Shown here piece by piece: positions 3,714-59,451 of a stretch of 64,000 nucleotides of DNA. The DNA is taken from positions 124,001-188,000 of IMG/VR virus record IMGVR_UViG_3300042922_001182; one strand, 5' to 3'. Within the stretch, counting starts at the first letter, position 1. Each line of letters begins with the position of its first letter. A program made the position numbers and the translations under genes. The notes below the pieces were generated by a model. It was not told the DNA's origin. It saw nothing but the letters and a program-made list of their open reading frames with translations, and made no database searches.

Positions 3714-3725
3714 TATCAACCTGTT
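3714..3725 (-). promoter_or_regulatory. late-type promoter AACA-N6-TA (peptidase/terminase operon)
   Basis: Minus strand AACA GGTTGA TA, ~35 nt upstream of the start at 3680. Confidence 0.75.
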
Positions 3726-3802
3726 AGGCGGACGCCAAACAGGTAACTCTCCGAGCTTCGGAGACACGTCTTACAAAAATCGAAACTATTGGCTAAGCGG
3801 AC

Positions 3803-3811
3803 AAATATTAT
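3803..3811 (+). promoter_or_regulatory. early-type promoter motif AAATATTAT
   Basis: Variant of the recurring ATATTAT motif, upstream of a small plus-strand cassette. Confidence 0.6.
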
Positions 3812-3844
3812 TTTGGTGAGCAGATGAAGAAAGGACCTATCATC

Positions 3845-4210
3845 ATGAATCTTAGCACCGCCGCTCGCCTCCTCGACATGGGCCTCCTGGCTCGCTCCAA
3901 GAGGAAGATCGTCGTCAACTCCGAGGACCTGGACAAGGTCATGGAGCTGGCGGCCAAGGTCAACTCACCGGGGGCCCGTATCAGCACCGATGGCCACGAC
4001 GTCACCGTCGAGCACGCCGGTGGCGTGGACACCTACCAGGTGTTCTGGAGAGGCCACAAGCAGCTCCTGGCGTCGGAGTGCCCGGCCTACAAGAAGATCC
4101 TGGACAAACAGGACTTCACGGCCAATCTTGGTCGGCTGTCCGACCTCAACCCGGAAGAGTCTATGATCCTGCCCCTGGATTTCGGTGAATTCGAGGAGCC
4201 CCAGTTCTAA
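3845..4210 (+). CDS. hypothetical protein (putative early)
   Basis: ORF; RBS AAAGGA before ATG 3845 (alternative start 3824). Confidence 0.75.
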   Translation: MNLSTAARLLDMGLLARSKRKIVVNSEDLDKVMELAAKVNSPGARISTDGHDVTVEHAGGVDTYQVFWRGHKQLLASECPAYKKILDKQDFTANLGRLSDLNPEESMILPLDFGEFEEPQF

Positions 4211-4246
4211 CCCAACCGCTTAGCCTCCCGAAAGGAGACAATTACA

Positions 4247-4390
4247 ATGAAGAACAACATCGACGTTACCAAGCCCGAAGATCTCGCCAGCATTTTCACC
4301 TACAAAAAGGCCGAGACCAAGAAGACCACGAAGACCGTTCAGCCCGACGTCACCGATCCCAAGTACCTTCGGTCCATCTTTTCCTACTAG
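4247..4390 (+). CDS. 47-aa small protein with internal duplicated motif (not in ORF track)
   Basis: RBS AAAGGAG, then MKNNIDVTKPEDLASIFTYKKAETKKTTKTVQPDVTDPKYLRSIFSY*. Confidence 0.7.
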   Translation: MKNNIDVTKPEDLASIFTYKKAETKKTTKTVQPDVTDPKYLRSIFSY

Positions 4391-4433
4391 CGCCCCACCA
4401 CTTCCACGCCCTCCCGAAAGGAGACACTCCACC

Positions 4434-4823
4434 ATGTACAAGAACAACGCCATCAAGCCCATGCACTCCGAGGTTGAGGAGGCCAAGCTGGCACACTGGC
4501 ACGTCATCCGCGACACCCTCAAAGGGGTGGACAAGGTCAACGGCGAGGAGATCAAGCTCATCCAGCTGACCAGCGACCTCACGGTCTTGGTCCAGACGGT
4601 CATGGGCTTCTACGAGATGGTCATCGACGGTGACTCGGTGGTCGCTCGCCCCTGCGTTATGACCATCGAGGATATCGACCTCCCCGTCATCTGCACCATC
4701 TACCGCGATATCAACCTCATCGGTAAAAATGATCGCAAGTCCACTGCCAAGGAGAAGATCGATACCACCGAGGTAAACCCTGCGACCTCCCTCGGTTCGA
4801 TGCTCGGCGGTATGTTCAGCTAA
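4434..4823 (+). CDS. hypothetical protein (putative early)
   Basis: ORF with RBS AAAGGAG, followed by a terminator. Confidence 0.75.
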   Translation: MYKNNAIKPMHSEVEEAKLAHWHVIRDTLKGVDKVNGEEIKLIQLTSDLTVLVQTVMGFYEMVIDGDSVVARPCVMTIEDIDLPVICTIYRDINLIGKNDRKSTAKEKIDTTEVNPATSLGSMLGGMFS

Positions 4824-4862
4824 AAAGAAAAGGGGTACCCGGTGGGTACCCTCTTCTTTTTT
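4822..4862. terminator. bidirectional intrinsic terminator
   Basis: A-rich tract, GGGTACCC-based stem-loop, T-rich tract, between convergent genes. Confidence 0.8.
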
Positions 4863-4935
4863 GCAAGCGAGAACCCGCATCCTCTCGGATGCGGGCTATC
4901 ACTTGCGAAACGGCTCTCGTCAGGAGGAACGAGAA

Positions 4936-6540
4936 CTAGGCGGGCATCGTGCCGTTGTTGTTGAGGATGGTGATCTCGCACGCCACCGGGTTCAGCTCCT
5001 CGATGGTGTCGCGACGGGTGACCATGATGTTCGGCACGTTGCCGTTCATCGGGTCGCGGTAGTCGCGCTCCACGTTGAAGGTGTACGGGTAGTACTTGAA
5101 CGTCATCTGCTTGTTGCTGGAGGGGATGAAGATCATGCGGATCTTGCCCTGCGGCACGTTGTCGGACGACACCACGGCGTAGCGGTTGGCCGCGCCGGAC
5201 ACCACGCCGAAGTTGTAGTTCACGTCCACGCCGCCCATGTCGGCCGTCGCGTTGGTGAACTGCCACTCCACGCCCACGAGCACGGCGGCGTCGATGGGGT
5301 TGCAGATGATGGCGTAGGAGCCGGAGTAGTACGAGGAGTCCGACTTCATCTTGTTGGCGAAGTAGTCGATGACGCCGCGCAGCTCCTTCTTCCACTCGGT
5401 CGGCGAACCGGCGTAACCGGCCGACGGGTGGCAGTCGAAGGAACCCTGGTAGATCTCGCCGTGGAAGTGGAACGAGCGATCCAGGAACTTCAGGATCTCG
5501 CGGTCGACCTTCTGGGCGTGGACGTTGGAGATGATGTCAACCGCCTCCAGCGCCGAGTCGATGTTGTACAGGGCCAGGTTGTCCTGCAGGAACTCGATGG
5601 GCAGGGGCGAGTTGATGTGGGCGCCGGTGCCGATGACGACTTCCTTCAGGCGGATGTCGAAGCCGACGGCCTCGCCGTGGTTGCTGTTCTCATCCGTCAG
5701 GTAGCCGCGAACGACGACGCTCTTGGCGGTGCCTTCGACCGAGGTCAGGCGCAGCAGGCCGGTGACGCGGTCCAGGGCGCCCGTCAGGGTGCAGACCACG
5801 GTCTTGGCGGTGGGGGCGGCGGAGTCGGTGTAGGGCACGACGACCTCGCCGAAGAGGCGGTTGTCGTTGCTGAGGCGCAGCTCGACATCCTCGACCAGCA
5901 CGTCGACGGTGGTGGTGTCGGTCTTGGTGACGGTCACGGTGACCTTGTCGATGACGAAGTTGGCGTCGATCGAGTCACCGGCCTCCAGCGAGGCGCCAGC
6001 GACCAGCGTGATCAGGTTCACGCCCTTGGCGGGCATGGTGATCGGGTCGGTCGACAGCTTGGTCTTCTCCAAGATGGTGTCGGCGTCGGTGCGCATCGCC
6101 TGCGGCAGGTAGGCCTTGGTGCCGTCCTGGCGCTTGATGTAGGGGGTCAGCCAGGAGATCGAGAACTTCGGCAGGCGGACCGCCTCGGTGGGGATCGCCA
6201 TCTTGAGGCCGATCTTGGGCCACGACTTGCGGATCATGGGCATCGACAGGGCCGACACCGCCGCGATGTTCGCGGTCACGCTCTCGCTCAGGAAGTGGGT
6301 GCGGTTGTTCTTGATGAGCTGCTCGAAGGCAGCGGCATCCTCGGCCCGCAGACCCTTGCTGAGGAGCTCGATGTAGCTCTCGAAGTACGCCTGGTCGGCC
6401 ATGATTTCCTTCACGCCCTCCAGGGTGGTGACGCGCACACGGTCGCCTTCGAACTTCTCGGCGGCCTCGCGGATCACCTGAGACGCCTTGTCGGTCGTGA
6501 CGGGCGCCTGGTGCATGCTGGGGTAGATAATCTCGGACAT
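4936..6540 (-). CDS. major capsid protein precursor (T4 gp23/AR9-like)
   Basis: 534 aa; FLSE processing-like site followed by SMPMIRKSWP, PIEFLQD...IDSALE...VDREIL and C-terminal PNIMVTRR, typical of gp23-like capsids; strongly biased codons; own late promoter. Confidence 0.88.
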   Translation of the reverse strand: MSEIIYPSMHQAPVTTDKASQVIREAAEKFEGDRVRVTTLEGVKEIMADQAYFESYIELLSKGLRAEDAAAFEQLIKNNRTHFLSESVTANIAAVSALSMPMIRKSWPKIGLKMAIPTEAVRLPKFSISWLTPYIKRQDGTKAYLPQAMRTDADTILEKTKLSTDPITMPAKGVNLITLVAGASLEAGDSIDANFVIDKVTVTVTKTDTTTVDVLVEDVELRLSNDNRLFGEVVVPYTDSAAPTAKTVVCTLTGALDRVTGLLRLTSVEGTAKSVVVRGYLTDENSNHGEAVGFDIRLKEVVIGTGAHINSPLPIEFLQDNLALYNIDSALEAVDIISNVHAQKVDREILKFLDRSFHFHGEIYQGSFDCHPSAGYAGSPTEWKKELRGVIDYFANKMKSDSSYYSGSYAIICNPIDAAVLVGVEWQFTNATADMGGVDVNYNFGVVSGAANRYAVVSSDNVPQGKIRMIFIPSSNKQMTFKYYPYTFNVERDYRDPMNGNVPNIMVTRRDTIEELNPVACEITILNNNGTMPA

Positions 6541-6634: not shown

Positions 6635-6646
6635 TATTTTATTGTT
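6635..6646 (-). promoter_or_regulatory. late-type promoter AACA-N6-TA (major capsid gene)
   Basis: Minus strand AACA ATAAAA TA upstream of the capsid gene. Confidence 0.8.
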
Positions 6647-7740: not shown

Positions 7741-9252
7741 CTAATCGGCGGTCAGCATGTAGAGGCACAGCACCGCCTCGTTGCCCAGCTTGCGGCTCGG
7801 CTCGCCTGCGGAGTCCAGGAGGTTCTTGGTGCTGCGCATGTTCTTCTCTGCCTCCTGGTTGGCCTCCTGGGAGAAGACACCACGCACGGAGACCGTATCG
7901 CCGTCGTAGTCGCCGTTGAGGGCGGCCAGGTAGGCGTTGGACATCTGGAGCGTGTCGACGAAGCCGTTGTCCTCCTCGGGGTAGTCGGGGAAGATCTCCG
8001 GGTAGTCCTCGAACATCCTGTTGCCCAGCTTCTGCACCTTCGTCTTCCTGGTGGAGAGAACGTGGATCTTCGAGGCGTGGATGTTCTGGTGGTGCTCGAC
8101 AGGGTACCGGGTGATGTAGACGTGCTTGTCGGCCGTCACCTTCTTCGCCACGATGTAGAGCAGGTCGATCAGGGTGAAGTCCCTGAGCAGGTCCTCCCTG
8201 TAGAGGGCCAGGGGGTACTCCTTGCCGTCGTCCGTCTTGATCATGATGGGGTCGAAGCGGTTCTCCTCGCTCTTGATGTAGAGCTGGATCATCTTCTTGA
8301 TCTTGGGGAGGGGGAACTGCGACAGAGGGTCCTTGAGCGTGTGGCGCTTGCCCTTCTCGTCCTCGATGAACTGGACGTCCCCGATCTCTGCCTGGAGGAA
8401 CTCCTGGATGCCGTGGACGAAGAAAGGGAAGAACTCCACGCACAGGTGGGACAGCGGGACGCCGGTCCTCTCGAAGCTGACCTTCATCTCCTCCGGCCGT
8501 TCGGCGTTGATCTTCGGGGCGCTGATGACGGCGCGGACGGCGTAGTCGATGCTCTTACCGAGGACGCCCTTCTGGATGATGCCGTTCTTCTTCGCCAGGC
8601 GCTGGGTCAGGTGCTCGAAGATCTCAAGCAGCTGGTCCTGGAGGGCCGCCTCGGTGGCGTGCCCGACGAAGCTGAACCCGCCGCTGGGGGAGGCGATGGT
8701 CAGGGAGAGGTTGAGCAGCCTGGAGTACATGGTGTTGAGCTCGTCAACCGAGATCTGGCCCTTCTGGGCCTTGGAGAGGTTGACGTCCCTGAAGAATGGA
8801 GGGATCACCAACCACTTGCCGACCAGGATCTCATCATCTTTGAGGGAGTTAACCAGGGCACGGCGTTCGTCTCGCAGGGCGCTGCCCGTGCTGGCGAACG
8901 TGAGCTTGCGGATGTTCCTGGTGAGGAAGTCGATACCGGTCTCGCCAGCCTCGTCCTCCACCAGCTCGCCGCCGACGATCTTGAACCTGGAGGTGCCCTC
9001 CAGGGCCTTCCGGAAGTTGCGGTCCATCGACACCATCGCCTTGAAGGCCACGGGGTGGATGAACTTCTTGCCCAGATCGATGTGGCCGAAGATCTCCCGC
9101 CTGTCCCTGCTACCGTAGGGACCGAACATCTCGTAGGAAAGCAGCCCGTCGCTCGTCGGCATGTTCCCCGGGTCGAACAGGATGGGGTTGGTGACCCTGG
9201 GGCACTGGTTGACCTCGACGATCTTGTCGAGAGGATTGATATCTAGCAGCAA
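7741..9252 (-). CDS. rpoC: multisubunit RNA polymerase beta' subunit, N-terminal catalytic part (probably virion RNAP)
   Basis: GLLSYEMFGP...RREIFGHIDL, LGKSIDYAVRAVI, TRYP and catalytic ALNGDYDGD; TTG start with GGAGG; late promoter. Confidence 0.92.
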   Translation of the reverse strand: MLLDINPLDKIVEVNQCPRVTNPILFDPGNMPTSDGLLSYEMFGPYGSRDRREIFGHIDLGKKFIHPVAFKAMVSMDRNFRKALEGTSRFKIVGGELVEDEAGETGIDFLTRNIRKLTFASTGSALRDERRALVNSLKDDEILVGKWLVIPPFFRDVNLSKAQKGQISVDELNTMYSRLLNLSLTIASPSGGFSFVGHATEAALQDQLLEIFEHLTQRLAKKNGIIQKGVLGKSIDYAVRAVISAPKINAERPEEMKVSFERTGVPLSHLCVEFFPFFVHGIQEFLQAEIGDVQFIEDEKGKRHTLKDPLSQFPLPKIKKMIQLYIKSEENRFDPIMIKTDDGKEYPLALYREDLLRDFTLIDLLYIVAKKVTADKHVYITRYPVEHHQNIHASKIHVLSTRKTKVQKLGNRMFEDYPEIFPDYPEEDNGFVDTLQMSNAYLAALNGDYDGDTVSVRGVFSQEANQEAEKNMRSTKNLLDSAGEPSRKLGNEAVLCLYMLTAD

Positions 9253-9286: not shown

Positions 9287-9298
9287 TAATGTTTTGTT
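9287..9298 (-). promoter_or_regulatory. late-type promoter AACA-N6-TA
   Basis: Minus strand AACA AAACAT TA upstream of the beta'-N gene. Confidence 0.75.
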
Positions 9299-15611: not shown

Positions 15612-15623
15612 TATCGACTTGTT
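15612..15623 (-). promoter_or_regulatory. AACA-N6-TA promoter
   Basis: Minus strand AACA AGTCGA TA upstream of 15574. Confidence 0.7.
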
Positions 15624-18281: not shown

Positions 18282-18293
18282 TACCGGGGTGTT
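18282..18293 (-). promoter_or_regulatory. AACA-N6-TA promoter for DNA polymerase
   Basis: Minus strand AACA CCCCGG TA, 30 nt upstream of the ATG. Confidence 0.7.
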
Positions 18294-19936: not shown

Positions 19937-19948
19937 AACATTCAATTA
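19937..19948 (+). promoter_or_regulatory. late-type promoter AACA-N6-TA
   Basis: AACA TTCAAT TA upstream of 20008. Confidence 0.7.
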
Positions 19949-21001: not shown

Positions 21002-22873
21002 ATGGACACTCTTACCGAAACCTACGACCTGACGGCGATCACCGCCGACCGCAATCTCTACGATCAGACCCTTCAGGCCATGAGAGATATGGCCGTTACC
21101 AACTACGCCTGCCGCTCCCAGAGCGTGGTCGTCAGCATCGGCGGGGAGGGGCGCACCATGCGCTTCAGCGACCTGCTCGTCAACCTCATCCTGGCCCGCC
21201 CGTTCGCCCACCTGTCGGTCCCGTTCGAGGCCGGGTTCATCCTCCCCACCGAGCAGGGCTTCAGCTCCGGAGGGGTCGCGGGGCATATCGACCGCATCAT
21301 CCAGCGGTTCGAGGGCAGCGACTACGAGGCGCTCAACCAGGCGATCTCCGAGTCGATCGAGATCCTGGCGGACCTGGCTGGCAAGTTCAACATCGCGGCC
21401 GGGAACAGCATCTCCATCTATTCGCTGGTCAAGGCCGCCCAGACGAACGGCGAGCTGGCCGAGCTGCTCACCCTGAAGCTCCCGCCCAACCTCCAGTTCG
21501 ACGAGATCGAGGACTTCATCGCCGACAGCACCAAGCGGTTGGTGGAGATCCTCAAGACGGAGGACACCCCTTTCCGCCCCTACCTGCGGGCGGGAACGGG
21601 CATCAACGTCAAGCAGCTGTCCCAGGCGATCATGATGATCGGGCTCAAGCCCGACCTCATCGGCAACGTCATCCCCTTCCCCATCGAGGCGAACTTCCTC
21701 ACGGGGCTGCGCCACGTCCGGGACTACTACATCAACGCCGAGGCCGCCCGAAAGGCCCAGATCGTCAACAACAAGAACGTGAAGGAGTCCGGCTACCTGA
21801 CGCGCAAGCTGTCCCTCCTCATGGTGGACATCGAGCTCGACAACGACCTGGAGGACTGCGGCACCCAGCACTACCTCACCTGCCGCGTGGAGGACGAGAA
21901 GGTGCTCCGGCGCATCGTCGGCCGTAGGTTCCTGGCCGGTGACGGCTCCTTGCAGCTCATCGAGCACGGGGACGACTACCTCATCGGCTACGAGCTCATG
22001 CTCCGCAGCCCCGTGACGTGCTGCTCCCAGAGGGTCTGCCGCACCTGCTACGGCGAGAACCTGGCGACCCTCAACCGGGACGTCCACGCAGGGCTGTTCG
22101 CCATGCTCTACCTGACCCACCAGCTGACCCAGATGCTGCTCAGCTCCAAGCACCTCCTCCAGACGACCTCGCAGAAGATCGACTGGCCGGAGGAGTTCCT
22201 GGGGCGGTTCACCGTCGACCGGAACATGGTGACCCCGAACAACACCTCCAGCGACGCCATCGTCATCGACCAGATGGACATCACCGAGGCCGAGGACGGC
22301 GCCTACCGGAGCATCAGCCGGTTCTGGATCACCTCCCGCAGCAAGAACCGGACGGAGGTCTACGTTCCCATCGAGTTGGTGCTCAGCCGAGAGACCGAGC
22401 GCCTGCTCGCCAACTTCAAGACGTCCGACAGCGAGATCACCATCCCGCTGAAGGCGTACGACGCCGAGGAGGCCGCCTTCCAGATCATCATGGAGAACAA
22501 GGAAATCTCGTCCTCCCTGAAGGGCATCCTCGACCTGATCGACTCGTCCGGCCACCTCGGCCTGGACCAGATCGACGACATCTTCAACAAGTTCGTCTCC
22601 CTGCTCAACGAGAGCGGGATCCGCCTCCAGGGCGTCCACGCCGAGATGGTCCTTCGGGCCCTCGTCAGGGACCCCGAGGACCTCCAGAAGCGCCCGGACT
22701 TCAACCAGCCGGAGTACCCCCCGTACACGGTGCTGCGGGTGGCCGAGGCCATCCACAACAGCGGCTCCGTCTCGGTGAGCCTGGCCTTCCAGGAGATCAA
22801 GCGCCAGCTGTCCTCCCCCTCGACCTTCAAGAAGAGCGAGTCGAGCAATCTCGACGCTGTCTTCCGTGGTTAG
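21002..22873 (+). CDS. rpoC: multisubunit RNA polymerase beta' subunit, C-terminal part (probably non-virion RNAP)
   Basis: Bridge helix ESGYLTRKL, EDCGT, zinc site RSPVTCC...VCRTCYG, trigger loop LTQMLLSSKH; RBS GGGAGG before ATG 21002. Confidence 0.92.
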   Translation: MDTLTETYDLTAITADRNLYDQTLQAMRDMAVTNYACRSQSVVVSIGGEGRTMRFSDLLVNLILARPFAHLSVPFEAGFILPTEQGFSSGGVAGHIDRIIQRFEGSDYEALNQAISESIEILADLAGKFNIAAGNSISIYSLVKAAQTNGELAELLTLKLPPNLQFDEIEDFIADSTKRLVEILKTEDTPFRPYLRAGTGINVKQLSQAIMMIGLKPDLIGNVIPFPIEANFLTGLRHVRDYYINAEAARKAQIVNNKNVKESGYLTRKLSLLMVDIELDNDLEDCGTQHYLTCRVEDEKVLRRIVGRRFLAGDGSLQLIEHGDDYLIGYELMLRSPVTCCSQRVCRTCYGENLATLNRDVHAGLFAMLYLTHQLTQMLLSSKHLLQTTSQKIDWPEEFLGRFTVDRNMVTPNNTSSDAIVIDQMDITEAEDGAYRSISRFWITSRSKNRTEVYVPIELVLSRETERLLANFKTSDSEITIPLKAYDAEEAAFQIIMENKEISSSLKGILDLIDSSGHLGLDQIDDIFNKFVSLLNESGIRLQGVHAEMVLRALVRDPEDLQKRPDFNQPEYPPYTVLRVAEAIHNSGSVSVSLAFQEIKRQLSSPSTFKKSESSNLDAVFRG

Positions 22874-27242: not shown

Positions 27243-27254
27243 TATTATTTTGTT
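27243..27254 (-). promoter_or_regulatory. late-type promoter AACA-N6-TA
   Basis: Minus strand AACA AAATAA TA, overlapping the upstream stop codon. Confidence 0.7.
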
Positions 27255-32681: not shown

Positions 32682-32693
32682 TATGGGTTTGTT
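32682..32693 (-). promoter_or_regulatory. late-type promoter AACA-N6-TA
   Basis: Minus strand AACA AACCCA TA upstream of the beta gene. Confidence 0.75.
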
Positions 32694-32970: not shown

Positions 32971-32982
32971 AACATCCCACTA
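32971..32982 (+). promoter_or_regulatory. late-type promoter AACA-N6-TA
   Basis: AACA TCCCAC TA upstream of 33056. Confidence 0.65.
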
Positions 32983-34169: not shown

Positions 34170-34181
34170 AACAAACGATTA
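34170..34181 (+). promoter_or_regulatory. late-type promoter AACA-N6-TA
   Basis: AACA AACGAT TA upstream of the tape-measure gene. Confidence 0.75.
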
Positions 34182-46069: not shown

Positions 46070-48646
46070 CTACAGGTAGGTGATGTCGATTCTGGGGGTG
46101 AAGCGCCTGTCGGGTGACAGGTAGCTGTTCCTATCCATGCCAACGTTCAGGTACTCCGGAACGTGGTTAATGAGTTGTTCGGCCGTCATATCGTCGGGTT
46201 TGTCCTCCGTCGCAAGAACGTTCTGGAGGGCCGCGTTGCCGTTGACGGCGTCGAACTCGATGTACACGATCAGCGGGAACTCTTGTTCGAGCCCCCTGAT
46301 GAGGTTCGATACCGAGAACCGCCTCTGCTCGTTCTGCACCGAGACGTTCGAAGCCTCGATGGTGTCGACGATGAACTTACGGATCTCCGTGTCGAGCCTC
46401 TGGGTGAGCAGGCCACGGAGCTTGATCTTCAGCTTGAGGAAGAGGTCGGTCGTCCCCGAGTTGAAGTACTTGGAAGGCCCCCAGGTGTTGTAGAACTTGA
46501 GGTCCATGTCCGTGTTGTTCTCCAGGCTACCCTTGTTCTCCCGGAGCATGCTCTCGAAGGCGTCCAGGAGGGAGTAGATGTCCTTGTAGTTGGCGAGGTT
46601 GGAGTAGTACTCGTAGCCGATCGCGGGGACGGAGTGGATCGCGACGTTGCCCGTCTCGGGGTCCACCCGGAAGTTGGACGACACGACGTTCATCGACTTG
46701 AAGAGGCTCACCACGGGGGCGGTCTCGTAGACGACCATGGTGGCGTACTCCTCGACGTCCGTCATGTCGATGAAGGTGCCGTGACGGGTGAAGTCGATTC
46801 CGCCGTCGTGCAGCAGGCCGATCTCGATTGACATGTCCTCGTCGACGTACGTCCTGGGGATGGTCGTCCCGCTGAGGACCTCCGACAGGGAGCCCACCAG
46901 GGCCATGCGGTAGCCGCTGTTGAAGGTGTCGTCGGTGTAGAGCGTCGCGGTGCACAGGTAGTTGCTGTCGGACTGCGTCTTCTCGAAGTCGAAGAAGCCG
47001 TAGGGGGCTCCGTCCTTCTTCAGGACGCCACGGACGATGACGTCTTGCATCTCCTCCGCCGCCATGTTGGTGGTGAGCGAGAAGGACACCTTGTACTCGG
47101 GCACCAGGCTGCTGTTGCGCTCCAGGTGGACGTCGCTGATGATGAACTCGTTGTTGATCTTGTAGTTGACGAAGGTGAACGGCGCCGGGATGTCCTCGGA
47201 CATCATGTTTCGGTAGTACGCGATCCGGGGGAACGGTGTGTCACGGAAGATCATCATGTACGGGATGGAGTACACGTAGTCGTCGGCGGCTGGCACCTCG
47301 ACGTTGGACATCAAGCGGAACAGCTTGCTGACCTTGTCGTAGATCACCTGGGACCCCGAGGGGATGACGCTGTTCAGAGCGGTCAGCTGGGCCAGGCTCG
47401 TCTGGAGGTGGAAGGTGTTGGTCGGGATGATGTTGCGGTTGAAGTCCCTCATCAGCGCGTAGCAGGAGATGAGGCGCCTCAGAACATCGTCCCTCTTCTT
47501 GAGGAACAGGAACCTGGAGCCGTTCTGGCTGTTCTGGGAGGCCACTCGCTCGAAGAAGAGGTTGATGTCCGTCTCGTTGATGATCGAGCCACGCGAGAGC
47601 TGGTACTCGATGACGCTCTTCTTGATCTCAAGCAGGTTCTTCGTGTCGACGCCGCCGACGGCCCCAGTGAGCGGGGTCACCTTCGGCTGAAGGCGGGCGA
47701 GCTTGCCCGTGTCGAACTTGAACTGGAGGTCGCCGGTGAAGTCGAAGACGCCCTTGCTGCCCTCGGTGACGTAGTACGCGACGGTCAGCTCGGAGTTGAA
47801 CTCCGGGCGGAAGCTACCGGGGGTGGCCGAGAAGTAGACCTGCAGCTGGCCGCGATCCCTGAAGGTGTAGAAGCAGAACTTCTCGGTGTCCGCAGGGGCC
47901 CTCAGGTCGTTGAAGTACTTCGGCAGCAGTTGGGTGCCACGGGAGTGCTTGTAGAACACGTCGAACGACGACATCTGCTTCGGGAAATCGATGAGGTAGA
48001 TGAGGTTGTCCGAGATGTCCTCCGAGTAGACGCTGAAGGTCTTGACGACCCGCTCCATCTGGTAGACGACGAGCTCCATGAACAGCCATACCTCGTTCTC
48101 CACCTCCTGCGACCACGTCCTGACGTAGGGGTTGGAGGGGACGGGAAGGGAGTCCTCGACGCCCACGGTGTCGTAGGTGGCCGTCACGGCGTAGCTGCCG
48201 CCAGCCGGGGTGAGCGTGAGTCGGACGGACCTGGGGAGCATGAACTGGAACGCCCCCGCGAAGAAGGGCTGGTTGCGGTCGATGATGAGGAGCCTGCTGC
48301 CGTCGAGCTGGGGCTCGGAGTAGCGGATGGCCTCCTCCTTCCTGAGGGCGAAGTTCACCCGCATGTTGGAGGGGGTGGCGAACGCGATGTCGAAGTTGTT
48401 GAGCTTCGCGGAGTTGTACACGCTCCGTGGGAGCCTCGCCGTGTTCAGGAAGAACTCGCGGTACAGGACGTTCCGGTGGAACACGCTCGTGCTCACCGCA
48501 TCCGACATCAGGGCGGTCATGTAGCCCAGGAGGCCGACCTTCAGGATGTTGGTCTCCTCGATGTTGAAGAAGCCCTTGGCCAGCTCCAGCGCTCTCGCGT
48601 CAAAGTCGTAGCTGGTGCTACCAATCTCTTGGATGGGATCTGCCAT
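46070..48646 (-). CDS. baseplate wedge subunit (T4 gp6/J-like)
   Basis: EFFLNTARLPRSVY...FATPS, YYVTEGSKG..F, GAVGGVD...EIKK motifs. Confidence 0.75.
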   Translation of the reverse strand: MADPIQEIGSTSYDFDARALELAKGFFNIEETNILKVGLLGYMTALMSDAVSTSVFHRNVLYREFFLNTARLPRSVYNSAKLNNFDIAFATPSNMRVNFALRKEEAIRYSEPQLDGSRLLIIDRNQPFFAGAFQFMLPRSVRLTLTPAGGSYAVTATYDTVGVEDSLPVPSNPYVRTWSQEVENEVWLFMELVVYQMERVVKTFSVYSEDISDNLIYLIDFPKQMSSFDVFYKHSRGTQLLPKYFNDLRAPADTEKFCFYTFRDRGQLQVYFSATPGSFRPEFNSELTVAYYVTEGSKGVFDFTGDLQFKFDTGKLARLQPKVTPLTGAVGGVDTKNLLEIKKSVIEYQLSRGSIINETDINLFFERVASQNSQNGSRFLFLKKRDDVLRRLISCYALMRDFNRNIIPTNTFHLQTSLAQLTALNSVIPSGSQVIYDKVSKLFRLMSNVEVPAADDYVYSIPYMMIFRDTPFPRIAYYRNMMSEDIPAPFTFVNYKINNEFIISDVHLERNSSLVPEYKVSFSLTTNMAAEEMQDVIVRGVLKKDGAPYGFFDFEKTQSDSNYLCTATLYTDDTFNSGYRMALVGSLSEVLSGTTIPRTYVDEDMSIEIGLLHDGGIDFTRHGTFIDMTDVEEYATMVVYETAPVVSLFKSMNVVSSNFRVDPETGNVAIHSVPAIGYEYYSNLANYKDIYSLLDAFESMLRENKGSLENNTDMDLKFYNTWGPSKYFNSGTTDLFLKLKIKLRGLLTQRLDTEIRKFIVDTIEASNVSVQNEQRRFSVSNLIRGLEQEFPLIVYIEFDAVNGNAALQNVLATEDKPDDMTAEQLINHVPEYLNVGMDRNSYLSPDRRFTPRIDITYL

Positions 48647-50704: not shown

Positions 50705-50738
50705 GTCGTATCTCCCTATCACTTTCCGGAGCTATTCA

Positions 50739-50750
50739 CATCTAAATGTT
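50739..50750 (-). promoter_or_regulatory. late-type promoter AACA-N6-TG
   Basis: Minus strand AACA TTTAGA TG upstream of the baseplate operon. Confidence 0.65.
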
Positions 50751-51108: not shown

Positions 51109-51147
51109 GGAGGCGGGGCCCTAGCGGCCACGCCTCCCTTCTTTTTT
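51109..51147 (+). terminator. intrinsic terminator
   Basis: GGAGGCGGGGCC-loop-GGCCACGCCTCC followed by CTTCTTTTTT. Confidence 0.8.
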
Positions 51148-51175
51148 GGGTGTGACCAAGACCCCCGTGCAAACT

Positions 51176-51187
51176 AACATTTCATTA
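51176..51187 (+). promoter_or_regulatory. late-type promoter AACA-N6-TA
   Basis: AACA TTTCAT TA upstream of 51235. Confidence 0.75.
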
Positions 51188-51234
51188 TCGAAAGCGCATT
51201 AATCCCTTCAAGGAGAGAGCGAGGAAAACTGTTT

Positions 51235-52419
51235 ATGCTTAAGGACATTTTCGAAGTGGTCCGGGCGGTGGCGGACTACGCTGACGTCGATTCGGCCAAG
51301 GAGAACATCAAGGACGCTCTCCTCACCAAGAGGAGGGATTCCATCGTCAGCAGGGCGAAGGACTCGATCGCCATGTTCCCGGCGATCTTCTCGACCAGCG
51401 TCAGCCAGACCACGGCCATGATGCTGATCAAGGCCCTGGAGGTCGAGTACGCGGAGCTGTTCCGGATCGTGCTGAGCAACGAGGGAATCATCGACCTCGA
51501 CAGCAACGACGCGAACACCAAGCGGAGTCTCGTCCGCAAGTTCCACCAGAACACCTACGTCGGCGCCCGTGACGGCATCGATGTTAGCTCCGTCGTCAGG
51601 GAGCAGGTCCAGCCCGAGCACGTCTTCCAGGCCTGCCGCGAGCTGCTGACCGCCAGCGCCGAGGACCTCAACCTGGAGAGCCTCAACGACATGACGATCA
51701 AGAACGTGCGGATCTTCACCGAGGCCCGCGAGAACGAGATCAAGAACAACGGCGTCCGGAGCCAGATCGACACCAAGGAGATCAAGAAGTTCGGCACGAT
51801 GGAGCCCCTGATCCTCCGGATCGAGGTCCAGTACAAGACGAACGCCGGTAGCACGACCACCACCGAGCTGGTCCTCGGCGTGAAGGTCGTCCCCCACTTC
51901 GTCGACACGAACGAGATGACCTACTACGTGGGCAGCTCGATCAAGCACGAGTCGGTCGTCTTCCGCATCATCCAGTGGGCCACCGGCGAGATCCAGTTCT
52001 TCCGCGACCTGCTCCTGACCGTGGACCAGGCGAAGGACGACGCCCGCTCCAGCTCGTCCATGGGCCGCACCTCGGCCTCCCTGTGGTGGCACAAGCTCCG
52101 CAGCCTGGCAAAGTCGTCGAAGTTCCGCAACCTGCTCGGCACCGAGAAGATCCTGCCCAACGCGACGATGGTCCTGACCATGGACGAGGCGCAGCACCTC
52201 AAGGCCACCGAGGGCCTGGACCTCATGGACCCCAAGAACGCCCAGAAGCTCGTCGAGGTGTTCTTCCTCATGAGGCTCACCGTGGTGGACGAGGCCGATG
52301 AGATCGCGTACATGTACGACGAGGACACCATGTCGTACAACCGCTACTCCTACTCGTCGTTGTCGAAGTCCGGCAACACCAACGAGCTCAAGGCGCTAGT
52401 CTCCCTGCTCAGCAGGTAG
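51235..52419 (+). CDS. probable virion structural protein (394 aa)
   Basis: Late promoter and RBS; TGEIQFFRDLL and ILPNATMV pattern recalled from jumbo-phage virion proteins. Confidence 0.65.
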   Translation: MLKDIFEVVRAVADYADVDSAKENIKDALLTKRRDSIVSRAKDSIAMFPAIFSTSVSQTTAMMLIKALEVEYAELFRIVLSNEGIIDLDSNDANTKRSLVRKFHQNTYVGARDGIDVSSVVREQVQPEHVFQACRELLTASAEDLNLESLNDMTIKNVRIFTEARENEIKNNGVRSQIDTKEIKKFGTMEPLILRIEVQYKTNAGSTTTTELVLGVKVVPHFVDTNEMTYYVGSSIKHESVVFRIIQWATGEIQFFRDLLLTVDQAKDDARSSSSMGRTSASLWWHKLRSLAKSSKFRNLLGTEKILPNATMVLTMDEAQHLKATEGLDLMDPKNAQKLVEVFFLMRLTVVDEADEIAYMYDEDTMSYNRYSYSSLSKSGNTNELKALVSLLSR

Positions 52420-53438: not shown

Positions 53439-53450
53439 AACAAAAAGATA
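53439..53450 (+). promoter_or_regulatory. late-type promoter AACA-N6-TA
   Basis: AACA AAAAGA TA upstream of 53517. Confidence 0.75.
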
Positions 53451-55922: not shown

Positions 55923-55923
55923 T

Positions 55924-56294: not shown

Positions 56295-57401
56295 CTAGGT
56301 GCCCACCACGCCGCTGAAGCCCTCGAAGAGGTAGTCCAGCTTGATGTAGTTGGCGCCGTAGTAGCGCTCGTTCACGCGCTTGAGCGACTCGGGGTCGTAC
56401 AGGTCGGTGATCTGGGAGCGGAGCATCGCCACCTCGGCGTCGGTGATGCAGGCGAAGGAGTCCTTGATGCTCAGCACTCGGAAGTTCTGCTCCAGGACCT
56501 TCAGCTCCTCGTCGGTTAGCGCTCCCTTCCGCTCGTCCTTGGACACGCGGGCGATGAGGTCATCGGGGTCGTCGTAGGCGGTCTGGGAGATCAGGCCGTC
56601 CTCCAGCCACCCCCGGATGCGCCCCAGGGCCTTCAGCGGGCCGATGCCCCGGCGCACCGCGTCGATGTCGTACCTCTTGGACCCGGAAAGGGCGAAGACG
56701 TACGGCAGGAGCTCGGGGCTGATGAAGCCGGGCACCTTGTCGTCGCTGCCCGCCACGGAGGCGATGGCGCTCTCCCGGTCGACGACGTCGCTCTTCTCGC
56801 CCTTGGCGGTCATGACGATGGCGTACTCGTCGATCTCGGTGTACTGAACGGCCAGCGGGTCGTTGCTGATGACGCAGGTGAGCTGCCCGGGGACGTGGAA
56901 CAGGTAGGGCACCACCCGGTGATCGGTCTCACCGGTGTCGAGGAAGTAGACGTAGGGGATGTACTCGCACACGCCCCGGGCCAGCTTGATGTTGATGTCC
57001 ATGACCTCGTTCAGACCGGCGAACTCCGGCGAGGCGGGACCGCGCTTCCGGTAGTAGTCGCTGCGGTACTTGTCGTTGATCTGAAGCATCCGCTTGGCGG
57101 GCTTGCCGGAGTAGTAGAAGTAGACGTTGGTGTACATCTCCAGGCGGCTCCAGAAGTAGTGCCGGTAGTGGGCGGCGGCGTTGAGGATGCCCTCGGAGGA
57201 GATCGCCAGCCGCTGCTCCCTCTTGAGCTTGCCGAACATCTGCAGCATCTCGGGCTTGTAGAGGCTGTTCAGGATGCTCCCCACATCCAGGAAGATGTTG
57301 ACGGTGTCGTAGCCCTCGGGGATCTTCGTCTTCGTCACCTCGTTGAGCACGTCGTACCGGATCTTCTTGCTGTGCAGGATCTTTTCAAGCGCGTCGTTCA
57401 T
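56295..57401 (-). CDS. PIN/FEN-fold 5'-3' nuclease-like protein (T4 RNase H-like, divergent)
   Basis: NIFLD, YR..Y..KR, VISND and helix-hairpin GIGPLKA motifs; several acidic ligands look degenerate. Confidence 0.5.
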   Translation of the reverse strand: MNDALEKILHSKKIRYDVLNEVTKTKIPEGYDTVNIFLDVGSILNSLYKPEMLQMFGKLKREQRLAISSEGILNAAAHYRHYFWSRLEMYTNVYFYYSGKPAKRMLQINDKYRSDYYRKRGPASPEFAGLNEVMDINIKLARGVCEYIPYVYFLDTGETDHRVVPYLFHVPGQLTCVISNDPLAVQYTEIDEYAIVMTAKGEKSDVVDRESAIASVAGSDDKVPGFISPELLPYVFALSGSKRYDIDAVRRGIGPLKALGRIRGWLEDGLISQTAYDDPDDLIARVSKDERKGALTDEELKVLEQNFRVLSIKDSFACITDAEVAMLRSQITDLYDPESLKRVNERYYGANYIKLDYLFEGFSGVVGT

Positions 57402-57445
57402 GGCCGGTCGGGGCCTCCTTTGCGGGTAGGGTCGGGGGAAGGTCG

Positions 57446-57457
57446 TATGGGGCTGTT
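57446..57457 (-). promoter_or_regulatory. AACA-N6-TA promoter
   Basis: Minus strand AACA GCCCCA TA upstream of 57401. Confidence 0.7.
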
Positions 57458-57764
57458 GGCGGGGGCATTTCCAGGTTATGCGGAGGCGTGCCTCGCTCGC
57501 GGTTAATGATTCCGTATGTCAGAGTAAGTTCTAGGATACATAGTTGCAAATGAAAGAGAGAAAGGAGTACAACAACTCCTTTCTTCTTATTTAAACACGA
57601 AGTTACCTAGAGGTCCCCTAGAGAACCTGGAAAAGGTCATCAAAGGATAGTTTTGACCGGTAATTAACTTTTTAGGGAAGACCTTAAAGGTCTAAACGGT
57701 ATGTATCTGTAAATCGCGCGAAATCCCACCCAGGGAATAAAGCGAATCTAAGCCATTTCCGACC

Positions 57765-57773
57765 GTATATTAT
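57765..57773 (+). promoter_or_regulatory. early-type promoter motif GTATATTAT
   Basis: CGACC-GTATATTAT, 45 nt upstream of 57818. Confidence 0.7.
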
Positions 57774-57817
57774 TGTTGTGACGTGATTGGATACTTAGCT
57801 ATAGGAGGTTATTAATC

Positions 57818-58579
57818 ATGAACAACAACAAGCCTTTCGTCCGTGGTAACTTCGAGCAGGCCACCTGGCTGACCGAGCGGATCATGCAGCACATCGTCAC
57901 CGGCAAGGCGAAGCGCGTGCGGGACTACCTGGAGTTCGCCCGCCGCCAGCTCCAGGTTTCTGAGATCCCGGCGGACAACAAGCTGAAGGTCAGCAGCCTG
58001 AAGGTCATCGGCATCCACGAGGACGTCCTCGAACTCGCCATCGAGCTCCTCAAGTCGGAGGGCTGGAAGGCGGGCAACGTCTCCCAGGAGGACTTCCTCA
58101 ATGGTTCCCCCTGGCTCCTCGACGCCAAGATGCAGGAAGATCTCCTGAAGAAGGCGGAGAAGGACGAGGAGAAGAAATCCGAATCCATCGGGTCCATCTT
58201 CCTCTTCGTCAAGGCCAACCAGGTGGTCCTGGACAAGACCACCATCTACCGCGCCGAGTGCGTCGCGGAGGACATCGTCCTCCAGAGCAAGATGCGCAGC
58301 TGCATCGGACTGACCGTCGAGGAGATCGAGGACCGAGGCGGCTTCCTCGCGGAGGCCATGCACGACCTCCAGGGCAAGATGCTCACGAAGACCTTCAACT
58401 TCCTGAAGAGCTTCGACGACAACGAGCTCAGCACCGCCCAGCGGGACAAGCTCTTGGGCATCATCCTGGGGAACACCGTCGCTCACCTCGACGCGATCAT
58501 CCCCGGCTGCGGGGAGGCCTTCGAGGCGTCCTCCAGCGCCAAGGTCCAGGCCCTGGTCAAGACCGGTTCCAAGCGCTAA
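57818..58579 (+). CDS. hypothetical protein, monocistronic putative early gene
   Basis: RBS AGGAGGT, own promoter motif and terminator. Confidence 0.8.
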   Translation: MNNNKPFVRGNFEQATWLTERIMQHIVTGKAKRVRDYLEFARRQLQVSEIPADNKLKVSSLKVIGIHEDVLELAIELLKSEGWKAGNVSQEDFLNGSPWLLDAKMQEDLLKKAEKDEEKKSESIGSIFLFVKANQVVLDKTTIYRAECVAEDIVLQSKMRSCIGLTVEEIEDRGGFLAEAMHDLQGKMLTKTFNFLKSFDDNELSTAQRDKLLGIILGNTVAHLDAIIPGCGEAFEASSSAKVQALVKTGSKR

Positions 58580-58617
58580 GAAGAAGGGGAAGCCAGGCGG
58601 CTTCCCCTTCTTTTTTT
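58580..58617. terminator. intrinsic terminator
   Basis: AGAAGGGGAAGCC-loop-GGCTTCCCCTTCT plus T-run. Confidence 0.85.
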
Positions 58618-59380
58618 AGCCCTCGGAGTCCTTCAACCGGACCAGGTAGGCCATGAACGAGTCGTAGTCCTTGTCGACGATCTTGAAGTACCTGATTCCG
58701 AGCCTCTTCACCTCGGCCTCCTTGGCGATCTCCTTGACCCGTTCTCGCTCCCTGTAGTCGTGGGTGTTGGCGATAGATGGGTCCACGCCGTCTGCAACGG
58801 AGGAACCCTTCACCTCCACGATGAGGTCGTAGCTGGTGAGGTAGAAATCGGGGATGTAGACCCGCTTGACGCCTCCCTCCTCGTAGACGATGGTCTGCGG
58901 GGCGGGGGAGATCACGTCGCTGGGGTTCCACTCAAGGACGACGTCCATGAACTCAAGGAAGTCCCTCTCGTAGGAGCCGGTGTAGGTGGAGCTGGTGCCG
59001 TCCCTCCACTCGTAGGTGCCCGAGATGCCACGGTTGGCGAGCATCTTGCGCTGCTGCTCGGGGTCGTCCAGAAGGTGCTCCTTCCCGAACTTCTTGACCA
59101 TCCGCTCCCTGAACTGGCTGCGGTACTTCTCCCGGCAGGAGGTCTCCGGACGGGAGCACAGGCGCTCGTAGCGGCCCGCCTTCTCGTTGAACGGGACGGA
59201 CTTGCGGCACATGATGCAGCTACCCCTACGGCCGCCGTTCCTGGAGTCGAAGAGGGCCTGGAGGGGGCTGACGCCGCCGATGGCCTTGAGCCCGTCCGAG
59301 TGCTCCCGCTCGATGTGCTCGCATAGGAGCTTCTCGTCCTTGCCCGTCCTGTCGCAGAACGGGCACTTCTGCTTCCTCAT
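58616..59380 (-). CDS. zinc-finger PD-(D/E)xK endonuclease (TnsA-N / T4 gp4 head-completion nuclease-like)
   Basis: C2H2 finger CPFC...HIEREH, second Cys cluster, SYERDF, YIPDFY...IVEVKG. Confidence 0.75.
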   Translation of the reverse strand: MRKQKCPFCDRTGKDEKLLCEHIEREHSDGLKAIGGVSPLQALFDSRNGGRRGSCIMCRKSVPFNEKAGRYERLCSRPETSCREKYRSQFRERMVKKFGKEHLLDDPEQQRKMLANRGISGTYEWRDGTSSTYTGSYERDFLEFMDVVLEWNPSDVISPAPQTIVYEEGGVKRVYIPDFYLTSYDLIVEVKGSSVADGVDPSIANTHDYRERERVKEIAKEAEVKRLGIRYFKIVDKDYDSFMAYLVRLKDSEG

Positions 59381-59406
59381 ATCGTCCTCCTGTTCTTTCC
59401 TGGCTA

Positions 59407-59451
59407 TAATATGGTGTTTCCACCAGAAGGGCGAAGGCCAACAAAACCATA
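59407..59451. promoter_or_regulatory. back-to-back AACA-N6-TA promoters
   Basis: Minus strand AACA CCATAT TA (59418-59407) and plus strand AACA AAACCA TA (59440-59451) between divergent genes. Confidence 0.7.

What the first reader, a model, noticed from the sequence alone, without database searches (positions are those of the whole stretch)
3714..59451. AR9-type late promoter AACA-N6-T(A/G) at 16 sites in a GC-rich genome; raises the question of uracil-containing DNA
Seen: exact matches, correctly oriented shortly upstream of operon starts, at 3714(-), 6635(-), 9287(-), 15612(-), 18282(-), 19937(+), 27243(-), 32682(-), 32971(+), 34170(+), 50739(-), 51176(+), 53439(+), 57446(-), 59407(-) and 59440(+). 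Near variants occur at about 24970, 43986 and 59939. Known: this is the late consensus read by the non-virion RNAP of AT-rich Bacillus phage AR9, which recognises deoxyuridines in the template strand. Inference: the same promoter code survives a large GC shift, so either this genome also contains dU or its RNAP reads the motif with thymine.
Basis: partly seen in the sequence, partly recalled or inferred. Interest (0 to 1): 0.7.

Follow-up and report, generated by a model that had tools for sequence, protein, structure and literature searches.

The report
AR9-type promoters in GC-rich jumbo phage
The AACA-N6-TA sites are real and are almost certainly late promoters read by this soil jumbo phage's own AR9-like RNA polymerase. 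The polymerase keeps the valine that makes the AR9 enzyme demand uracil rather than thymine, so this could be the first GC-rich phage with uracil DNA, though that is unproven.

Summary
All 16 listed sites are exact matches, each 24-94 nt upstream of a same-strand gene start.

**Enrichment.** Genome-wide, AACA-N6-TA occurs 52 times in 239 kb, and 38 of those lie in the 6% of the genome that is intergenic. That is 37 observed against about 3-4 expected. Spacings N4, N5, N7 and N8 are at chance.

**What the genome is.** It is a complete, uncultivated soil jumbo phage of 63.5% GC, syntenic with Bacillus phage AR9. It encodes all four split nvRNAP core subunits and a gp226 (promoter-specificity) homolog just outside the window.

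**Early promoters.** The AR9 early promoter ATATTAT-N6-G is also kept: 21 copies, 20 of them intergenic.

**Conservation.** Late motifs sit upstream of the same orthologous genes as in AR9 (odds ratio 7, p=0.002). Metagenomic relatives from 29% to 65% GC also carry them.

**Uracil or thymine.** This stays unresolved but leans towards dU, at about 0.6:
- The U-selecting valine (AR9 V206) and its helix are conserved.
- The phage groups inside the clade bracketed by proven dU phages.
- It lacks thymidylate synthase, dUTPase and UDG.
- It keeps a clade-specific deoxynucleotidase.

No RNA data exist, so start sites are untested. This is a new member of a known kind.

The parts
3714..3725 (-). Late promoter AACAGGTTGATA, 33 nt upstream of gene 2838-3680(-), a homolog of the AR9 zincin protease next to the capsid gene
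6635..6646 (-). Late promoter AACAATAAAATA, 94 nt upstream of the major head protein gene 4936-6540(-)
   Evidence: The AR9 major head protein homolog scores E=1e-131, and the AR9 ortholog also has the motif upstream.
9287..9298 (-). Late promoter AACAAAACATTA, 34 nt upstream of the virion RNAP beta' N-terminal subunit gene 7741-9252(-)
15612..15623 (-). Late promoter AACAAGTCGATA, 37 nt upstream of hypothetical gene 14777-15574(-)
18282..18293 (-). Late promoter AACACCCCGGTA, 29 nt upstream of family-B DNA polymerase exon 1, 17017-18252(-)
19937..19948 (+). Late promoter AACATTCAATTA, 59 nt upstream of gene 20008-20382(+)
27243..27254 (-). Late promoter AACAAAATAATA. It overlaps the stop codon of gene 27245-28447(-) and lies 24 nt upstream of the small acidic ORF 27054-27218(-). 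A second overlapping match starts at 27246.
32682..32693 (-). Late promoter AACAAACCCATA, 34 nt upstream of the TTG start at 32647 of the virion RNAP beta gene 28496-32647(-)
32971..32982 (+). Late promoter AACATCCCACTA, 73 nt upstream of gene 33056-34018(+). An early-type motif also lies upstream at 32848, so the gene probably has both promoter classes.
34170..34181 (+). Late promoter AACAAACGATTA, 41 nt upstream of the 2764-aa tape-measure-like gene 34223-42517(+)
50739..50750 (-). Late promoter, TG variant (AACATTTAGATG), 34 nt upstream of gene 48665-50704(-), an AR9 virion structural protein homolog
51176..51187 (+). Late promoter AACATTTCATTA, 47 nt upstream of virion structural gene 51235-52419(+)
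53439..53450 (+). Late promoter AACAAAAAGATA, 39-66 nt upstream of virion structural gene 53490/53517-54524(+)
57446..57457 (-). Late promoter AACAGCCCCATA, 44 nt upstream of gene 56295-57401(-)
59407..59418 (-). Late promoter AACACCATATTA, 26 nt upstream of endonuclease gene 58616-59380(-). It overlaps an early-type ATATTAT-N6-G on the same strand (59399-59412). It is one arm of a divergent pair that is conserved in relatives.
59440..59451 (+). Late promoter AACAAAACCATA, 30 nt upstream of the gp25-like baseplate wedge gene 59482-59910(+). It is the other arm of the conserved divergent pair.
46168..46179 (-). It lies inside the 3' end of gene 46070-48646(-), 125 nt upstream of gene 45162-46043(-). 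Status uncertain.
   Evidence: AR9 has 13 internal late promoters.
21002..22873 (+). Gene for the non-virion RNAP beta' C-terminal subunit, part of the enzyme inferred to read these promoters. It is probably driven from the early-type ATATTAT at 20534.
   Evidence: AR9 homolog E=5e-109

Best explanation
The sites are late promoters of an uncultivated, complete, 239-kb soil jumbo phage of 63.5% GC that belongs to the AR9/PBS1 - phiR1-37 - S6 group.

By homology with AR9 they are read by the phage's own five-subunit non-virion RNA polymerase. That enzyme has four split beta/beta' core subunits plus a gp226-like specificity subunit. It recognises the complement of AACA (3'-UUGU-5' at -11 to -8) in the template strand and starts at the final purine, 6 nt plus T downstream.

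The promoters drive capsid, tail, baseplate and virion-RNAP genes. A second conserved motif, ATATTAT-N6-G, marks the early genes read by the injected virion RNAP.

Shown here: the motif, its spacing, its placement, its conservation across relatives, and the presence of the enzyme genes. Inferred: which enzyme reads the motif, the start site and the timing.

I put about 0.9 on 'late promoters of the phage nvRNAP'. Separately, I put about 0.6 on the DNA carrying deoxyuridine in place of thymidine, as in every characterised member of the clade.
For: Motif statistics:
- Intergenic AACA-N6-TA is 37 observed against about 3-4 expected, and only at N6.
- 38 of 52 genome sites fall in the 6% of the genome that is intergenic.
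- 41 of 48 intergenic TA/TG sites point at a same-strand start within 130 nt.
- The motif is identical to the AR9 late consensus mapped by dRNA-seq.

Enzyme:
- nvRNAP betaN, betaC, beta'N, beta'C and a gp226 homolog are all present.
- The gp226 homolog is 28% identical over its full length, and its only PDB match is 7S01_A at E=6e-46.

Gene class: the downstream genes are the major head protein, tail sheath, tape measure, baseplate, virion proteins and virion-RNAP subunits.

Conservation:
- Late motifs precede the same orthologs in AR9 (15/7/8/26 table, OR 7, p=0.002).
- A divergent pair between the endonuclease and gp25-like genes is kept in relatives of 29%, 34%, 49% and 64.5% GC.
- The association of the N6 spacing with gene starts is also seen in other GC-rich relatives.
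- The early promoter is kept too: 21 ATATTAT in the genome, 20 of them intergenic against 0.9 expected, and 18 of 21 have G exactly 6 nt on.

For dU:
- AR9 V206 clashes with the thymine methyl, and V206G lets the enzyme accept T (PMC9209446). Here it is Val within a conserved helix: YSDKVLWAYLKNM against AR9 YSDVVIWTYLKNM.
- betaN R363 is conserved.
- A rooted virion-RNAP beta tree groups the phage with phiR1-37 and AR9/BpSp, with S6 and LPJP1 outside (support 90/99).
- The genome has no ThyA, ThyX, dUTPase, dCTP or dCMP deaminase, or UDG.
- An AR9 gp150-like deoxynucleotidase lies next to the DNA polymerase. Its homologs in 50,697 phage records occur only in 19 AR9/S6/LPJP1-type genomes.
Against: There is no transcript data: no RNA run was listed and the only holder is the source soil metagenome. 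Start sites, timing and the identity of the reading enzyme therefore rest on homology.

Against dU:
- No Ugi homolog was found, although phiR1-37 lacks one too.
- There is no phage deaminase to make dUTP.
- All proven dU phages are AT-rich (28-33% GC) and well below their hosts. That pattern is commonly linked to unrepaired C-to-U deamination, and this genome is 63.5% GC.
- betaN K375, which bonds -10U in AR9, aligns with Asp. However, that column also varies in proven dU phages (R in phiR1-37, N in S6).
- The tree support is moderate and the outgroup branch is very long.
- Absence of thymidylate synthase and dUTPase is common in ordinary phages.

Gene boundaries come from my own simple caller.
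Confidence: 0.8

Rival explanations
1. The promoters and the enzyme are the same, but the genome contains ordinary thymine. This lineage's nvRNAP would have adapted to read 3'-TTGT-5' despite keeping the valine, through other changes around the pockets.
For: The genome is 63.5% GC, unlike every proven dU phage. No Ugi, dCMP deaminase or dCTP deaminase was found. betaN K375 aligns with Asp and gp226 I207 is Leu. The gp226 family shows natural variation at position 206 (T, S, A, I) in other lineages, so the pocket can evolve.
Against: Val206, Trp208, Tyr210 and betaN R363 are all conserved here and in four other GC-rich relatives. In AR9, exclusion of T at -11 comes from the DNA backbone conformation rather than a side chain, so one substitution would not relieve it. 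The K375 column varies among proven dU phages. The phage sits inside the dU-bracketed clade. It retains the clade-specific deoxynucleotidase.
Confidence: 0.3
2. The motif is read by something other than the phage nvRNAP. Candidates are a host RNA polymerase holoenzyme or a phage-encoded sigma/activator, or the motif is a non-promoter element such as an RNA processing or translation signal.
For: There is no direct transcript or binding data for this genome. Some sites follow hairpin and T-run terminators, so they lie in generally signal-rich DNA.
Against: The motif is identical in sequence and spacing to the AR9 nvRNAP consensus. It has no -35/-10 architecture. It lies 24-94 nt from start codons, which is too far and too variable for a ribosome-binding element. 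It co-occurs across 29-65% GC genomes only with gp226-family genes.
Confidence: 0.05
3. The sites are a chance or compositional artefact of AT-richer intergenic DNA.
For: Intergenic DNA is AT-richer (55% GC against 63.5%). The in-gene TG matches are indeed a codon artefact.
Against: Shuffles that keep each intergenic segment's composition give 4.1 +/- 2.1 against 37 observed. Neighbouring spacings and the reversed motif are at chance. Orientation towards genes and conservation at orthologous positions also argue against it.
Confidence: 0.01

Closest known systems
Bacillus phage AR9/PBS1 late promoters, read by the nvRNAP holoenzyme (gp105, gp089, gp270, gp154 and gp226)
   Same: The consensus is the same, AACA-N6-T(A/G). 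Placement before structural and virion-RNAP genes is the same. The split-subunit enzyme set and gp226 homolog are the same, with a conserved 2.1bis helix including V206, W208 and Y210. There is genome-wide synteny. The companion early promoter core ATATTAT-N6-G is the same.
   Different: The genome is 63.5% GC against 27.8%. Proteins are only 25-48% identical. No Ugi, dCMP deaminase or class I RNR homolog is present at the syntenic place. The early motif's upstream half is (C)AC rather than AAATAT. Base composition (dU or T), start sites and timing have not been measured. The phage is uncultivated and its host is unknown.
Yersinia phage phiR1-37 and Staphylococcus phage S6 (proven dU jumbo phages)
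   Same: They belong to the same clade by virion-RNAP beta, nvRNAP betaN and gp226. phiR1-37 likewise has no Ugi homolog.
   Different: Both are AT-rich. No late consensus could be derived for phiR1-37, whereas here the motif is very clear.
phiKZ-type nvRNAP (gp68) with TATG late promoters
   Same: It is a split multisubunit phage RNAP with a fifth, sigma-like specificity subunit, and its transcription is independent of the host.
   Different: It has a different promoter (TATG), thymine DNA, and a specificity subunit with no sequence similarity. Virion-RNAP beta identity is about 24% to the nearest such phages, against about 37% to the AR9 group.

Membership tests
AR9-type nvRNAP late promoter | Consensus AACA, exactly 6 nt, then T followed by a purine | tested here: met
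   37 intergenic TA sites against about 3-4 expected. N4, N5, N7 and N8 spacings are at chance.
AR9-type nvRNAP late promoter | Located upstream of, and oriented towards, late (virion, morphogenesis, virion-RNAP) genes | tested here: met
   41 of 48 intergenic sites are oriented to a start within 130 nt. Downstream genes include capsid, sheath, tape measure, baseplate and virion-RNAP genes. There is orthologous-position agreement with AR9, OR 7, p=0.002.
AR9-type nvRNAP late promoter | The cognate enzyme is encoded: four split beta/beta' nvRNAP subunits plus a gp226-family specificity subunit | tested here: met
AR9-type nvRNAP late promoter | Transcription starts at the final purine, late in infection | not testable with these tools
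   No RNA run was listed. The phage is uncultivated.
AR9-type nvRNAP late promoter | Template-strand recognition that requires dU at -11 and -10 | not testable with these tools
   Only a proxy is available: the V206-equivalent is Val, and W208, Y210 and betaN R363 are conserved.
Deoxyuridine-DNA jumbo phages (PBS1/AR9, phiR1-37, S6) | Thymidine is replaced by deoxyuridine in virion DNA | not testable with these tools
   Sequence data do not distinguish U from T.
Deoxyuridine-DNA jumbo phages (PBS1/AR9, phiR1-37, S6) | Phylogenetic position within the clade bracketed by proven dU phages | tested here: met
   In the virion-RNAP beta tree rooted on an Erwinia phage, (UViG, phiR1-37, (AR9, BpSp)) has support 90/99 with S6 and LPJP1 outside. 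The outgroup branch is long. betaN identity to AR9 is 39%, higher than phiR1-37's 35%.
Deoxyuridine-DNA jumbo phages (PBS1/AR9, phiR1-37, S6) | A uracil-DNA glycosylase inhibitor (PBS Ugi type) | tested here: not met
   No protein hits the AR9 Ugi gene. This is not a universal feature, because phiR1-37 lacks it. Seventeen small acidic ORFs exist as untested candidates.
Deoxyuridine-DNA jumbo phages (PBS1/AR9, phiR1-37, S6) | Nucleotide metabolism consistent with dUTP use: no thymidylate synthase or dUTPase, and a dTMP-depleting nucleotidase | tested here: inconclusive
   ThyA, ThyX, dUTPase, DCD, dCMP deaminase and UDG are all absent. An AR9 gp150-like HAD nucleotidase is present and clade-restricted, but it is below the Pfam NT5C cut-off (16.6 against 24.8 bits). 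A YfbR-like 5'-deoxynucleotidase is also present. Substrate specificity is unknown.
Deoxyuridine-DNA jumbo phages (PBS1/AR9, phiR1-37, S6) | A markedly AT-rich genome. This is an empirical trait of all known members, not a definition. | tested here: not met
   63.5% GC. The host is unknown, so the phage-host difference cannot be judged.
AR9-type early (virion RNAP) promoter | Conserved ATATTAT core with G (+1) exactly 6 nt downstream, before early genes | tested here: met
   There are 21 ATATTAT in the genome, 20 of them intergenic (0.9 expected). 18 of 21 have G at N6+1, against 5 and 3 at N5 and N7. The sites precede topoisomerase, nvRNAP betaC and the gp226 operon, as in AR9.

The most novel reading that the evidence does not exclude
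This is a GC-rich (63.5%) phage whose DNA carries deoxyuridine instead of thymidine, one of at least five GC-rich lineages of the gp226 family seen in metagenomes. If so, U-DNA is not confined to AT-rich phages of Firmicutes and Yersinia. A genome could then stay GC-rich even though cytosine deamination products cannot be told apart from its normal base.
Probability: 0.55. Interest if true: 0.7.

Novelty: new member of a known kind. Interest (0 to 1): 0.55.

Why it matters
The result extends the AR9-type transcription system from about 28% GC to about 64% GC with both motifs essentially unchanged. That system comprises template-strand promoter reading by a split, sigma-less phage RNA polymerase, plus the virion-RNAP early promoter. 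The promoter code is therefore a constraint of the enzyme and not a by-product of AT-rich DNA.

The result also gives a ready annotation rule for operons in a whole group of uncultivated soil jumbo phages.

It makes a sharp question testable as well. The residue that enforces uracil specificity in AR9 is retained in all the GC-rich relatives I examined. Either U-DNA exists in GC-rich phages, where it would be invisible to sequencing and is likely under-sampled by uracil-stalling library polymerases, or the valine rule from the AR9 structure does not generalise.

Tried and rejected
- **Dinucleotide shuffle.** My first script did not finish. I replaced it with per-segment shuffles and a Markov-1 model.
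- **TG variant.** I rejected the apparent fourfold excess of AACA-N6-T(A/G) over the whole window as evidence. Inside genes it matches a codon-shuffle null.
- **Near variants.** The sites at about 24970, 43986 and 59939 are spacing or one-base variants that occur at chance frequency. I left them as 'cannot tell'.
- **Transcripts.** I looked for RNA runs to map start sites and none was listed. The only DNA holder is probably the source sample, kept as contigs, so I did not use read laying because it could show neither start sites nor base identity.
- **Ugi.** No homolog was found. I judged this uninformative because phiR1-37 lacks one.
- **betaN K375.** K375-to-Asp looked like a hint of an altered U pocket. 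I rejected it as diagnostic because proven dU phages have R or N in that column.
- **Position 206 and GC.** I tested whether residue 206 tracks GC content across 18 further family loci. It does not: all GC-rich members have Val, while a T/S subfamily occurs in AT-rich and mid-GC genomes.
- **Pfam NT5C.** The six-frame search of the genome missed the nucleotidase at E<=0.001. The direct scan gives only 16.6 bits.
- **Literature.** Two searches found no report of GC-rich AR9-like phages. This was a limited search, so I make no claim of absence.

Full report
**What the window is.** The window is bases 124001-188000 of a single 238,984-bp contig with 63.5% GC. It is an IMG/VR viral genome from a soil metagenome, rated 100% complete by CheckV. 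It has a 127-bp terminal overlap.

No gene finder was available, so I wrote a codon-usage caller. It gives 283 genes and 94% coding, with a map that agrees with the mechanical ORF list.

Seventy-one proteins hit Bacillus phage AR9 in largely syntenic order at 25-48% identity. They include the major head protein, tail sheath, tape measure, baseplate, both sets of split RNA polymerase subunits, the DNA polymerase pieces, GroEL and primase. The virion RNAP beta gene in the window finds AR9/PBS1, the S6-like Staphylococcus phages, Listeria LPJP1 and Yersinia phiR1-37 at about 34-39% identity. Everything else is near 24%.

**Checking the observation.** All 16 listed coordinates are exact matches on the stated strand. 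Each lies 24-94 nt upstream of a same-strand start codon. For the virion RNAP beta gene I take the TTG at 32647, which has an AGGAGG 8 nt upstream.
- The window holds 22 AACA-N6-TA sites against 4.1 expected.
- Genome-wide there are 52, of which 38 lie in the 14.5 kb (6%) of intergenic DNA.
- Within intergenic DNA the count is 37, against 4.1 +/- 2.1 for shuffles that keep each segment's composition and 2.8 for a Markov-1 model.
- Spacings of 4, 5, 7 and 8 give 5, 2, 4 and 5. The reversed arrangement and shifted tetramers are also at chance.
- The extended consensus is AACA[A/C]NNNN[A/T]TA, and 41 of 48 intergenic TA/TG sites point at a gene start within 130 nt.
- One further site sits 41 nt before the genome's only tRNA gene, as AR9's single tRNA gene is also late.

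The TG form needs care. The big window-wide excess of T(A/G) matches (71 against 17.8) comes mostly from in-frame AAC...CTG/GTG codons. It disappears against a codon-shuffle null. Only the 11 intergenic TG sites (3-4.5 expected) carry signal. The three 'near variants' are not matches, and variants of that kind are at chance.

**What the sites are.** The motif equals the AR9 late consensus, which was defined from 94 mapped start sites as AACA-(6N)-TA/G with the last purine as +1 (PMC5312081). The enzyme that reads it in AR9 has four split beta/beta' subunits plus gp226, and all five have homologs here.

The gp226 homolog lies at genome 189471-190922, 1.5 kb past the window end. It is 28% identical over its full length, and its only match among solved structures is AR9 gp226, 7S01_A, E=6e-46. 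Among 50,697 cultured-phage records this protein family occurs in only 21, all of the AR9, S6, LPJP1 or phiR1-37 type.

The genes behind the motifs are what late genes should be: capsid, capsid-protease neighbours, sheath, tape measure, baseplate, virion proteins and virion-RNAP subunits.

Conservation supports function:
- For genes with AR9 orthologs, presence of the motif upstream here and in AR9 is associated (15/7/8/26, odds ratio 7, p=0.002).
- The back-to-back pair at 59407(-)/59440(+), between the endonuclease and the gp25-like baseplate gene, recurs at the same place in four metagenomic relatives of 34%, 29%, 64.5% and 49% GC.
- In four other GC-rich relatives, only the N6 spacing is associated with a downstream ribosome site and ORF. 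The count is 11 of 32, against 1-2 for other spacings, in a crude test.

**A second conserved promoter class.** An unbiased k-mer scan of upstream regions put ATATTAT at the top. It occurs 21 times in the genome, 20 of them intergenic against 0.9 expected. It usually appears as (C)ACATATTAT, and 18 of 21 copies have G exactly 6 nt downstream, against 5 and 3 at N5 and N7. That is the core and start-site geometry of the AR9 early promoter, AAATATATATTAT-(6N)-G.

These sites precede topoisomerase, nvRNAP betaC, the gp226 operon and many small genes, as in AR9. Five of the ATATTAT-N6-G matches are in the window. Both halves of the AR9 transcription programme have therefore survived a shift of about 36 points in GC.

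**Uracil or thymine.** This cannot be read from sequence, so I assembled indirect tests.

(a) Pocket residues.
- In AR9 the -10 uracil sits in a pocket where the C5 atom is 3.9 A from V206 of gp226.
- V206G makes the enzyme accept thymine.
- Exclusion of thymine at -11 comes from the DNA backbone conformation, stacked on Y210.
- The valine is reported as invariant in dU phages (PMC9209446).
- Here the helix reads YSDKVLWAYLKNM against AR9 YSDVVIWTYLKNM. Val206, Trp208 and Tyr210 are kept, and Ile207 is Leu.
- betaN R363 is invariant. K375 aligns with Asp, but that column is R in phiR1-37 and N in S6, so it is not diagnostic.

(b) Family-wide variation. Across 45 family members (27 proteins; 18 loci, some of them the same genes) spanning 23.5-65.7% GC, position 206 is mostly V, with I, T, S, A and two outliers. 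It is never G and does not track GC. All five GC-rich members, including this one, have Val.

(c) Phylogeny. A virion-RNAP beta tree rooted on an Erwinia phage puts this phage with phiR1-37 and AR9/BpSp (support 90/99), with S6 and LPJP1 outside. It is thus bracketed by proven dU phages, although the outgroup branch is very long.

(d) Gene content.
- The genome has no ThyA, ThyX, dUTPase, dCTP or dCMP deaminase, or UDG.
- It does have an RNR.
- Beside the DNA polymerase it keeps a homolog of AR9's 5'(3')-deoxyribonucleotidase. That protein's relatives are confined to 19 AR9/S6/LPJP1-type phages.
- A YfbR-like 5'-deoxynucleotidase is also present.
- PBS2 is known to induce a dTMP phosphohydrolase (my own knowledge of the older literature). 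Whether either protein here is that enzyme is inference.

Evidence against dU:
- No Ugi homolog was found, though phiR1-37 also lacks one.
- There is no phage deaminase.
- All known dU phages are AT-rich.

I put dU at roughly 0.55-0.6.

**Comparison and novelty.** Functionally and by membership these are AR9-type late promoters. Sequence, spacing, placement and cognate enzyme were all tested and met. Start site and dU dependence could not be tested.

The phage is a new, uncultivated, GC-rich member of the AR9-like group, and metagenomes hold at least four more GC-rich lineages. I found no description of such phages in two literature searches, which is not proof of absence.

The promoter finding itself is expected for a relative. 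The interest lies in the extreme conservation across base composition and in the now testable possibility of GC-rich U-DNA.

Noticed in passing
window 3805-3818(+), 32848-32861(+), 50818-50831(+), 57767-57780(+), 59399-59412(-); weaker copies at 20534(+) and 32780(-): There is a second conserved promoter class, ATATTAT-N6-G, usually (C)ACATATTAT. This is the core of the AR9 early (virion RNAP) promoter. Genome-wide there are 21 copies, 20 intergenic (0.9 expected), and 18 have G exactly 6 nt on.
   Followed up: yes
window 16481-17043(-): A group I intron (Rfam RF00028, 57 bits) splits the family-B DNA polymerase gene into 17017-18252 and 15669-16415. AR9 has many such introns, but not at this position in its annotated polymerase.
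   Followed up: partly
window 13991-14689(-) and 19201-19833(-): Two deoxynucleotidase-like genes flank the DNA polymerase. One is a HAD/NT5C-like homolog of AR9's 5'(3')-deoxyribonucleotidase, found only in AR9/S6/LPJP1-type phages. The other is a YfbR-like HD-domain 5'-deoxynucleotidase with no AR9 homolog. Both are candidate dTMP-depleting enzymes.
   Followed up: partly
window 18312-19184(-): A metallo-beta-lactamase-fold protein matches the Pfam anti-Pycsar Apyc1 family (75 bits, cut-off 50). It is a likely cyclic-nucleotide-degrading counter-defence gene and has a weak AR9 homolog.
   Followed up: no
window 59399-59451, and L009:4472-4548, L011:4146-4174, L012:4445-4538: A back-to-back late promoter pair between the endonuclease and gp25-like baseplate genes is conserved at the same place in relatives of 29-65% GC. 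In the 64.5% GC relative both arms end in TG rather than TA.
   Followed up: yes
genome 92269-92280(+), outside the window: A late motif lies 41 nt upstream of the genome's only tRNA gene, tRNA-Arg(CCT) at 92322-92396. AR9's single tRNA gene is also in the late class.
   Followed up: partly
window 50705-51234 and 57402-57817: Two unusually long intergenic regions (about 530 and 415 nt) each carry several promoter-type motifs on both strands. Short ORFs there (for example 50746-51000) were not called as genes. They could hold small genes or non-coding RNAs.
   Followed up: no
L025, L026, L028, L029, L035, L012, L032 (gp226 homologs): One subfamily of gp226 homologs has Thr or Ser instead of the U-selecting Val206, together with Leu instead of Tyr210. 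It occurs in both AT-rich and mid-GC genomes. Its promoters or base chemistry may differ from AR9's.
   Followed up: partly
window-wide coding regions: AACA-N6-TG is about fourfold over dinucleotide-shuffle expectation inside genes. The cause is purely in-frame AAC and CTG/GTG codons, which is a trap for motif counts in GC-rich genomes.
   Followed up: yes
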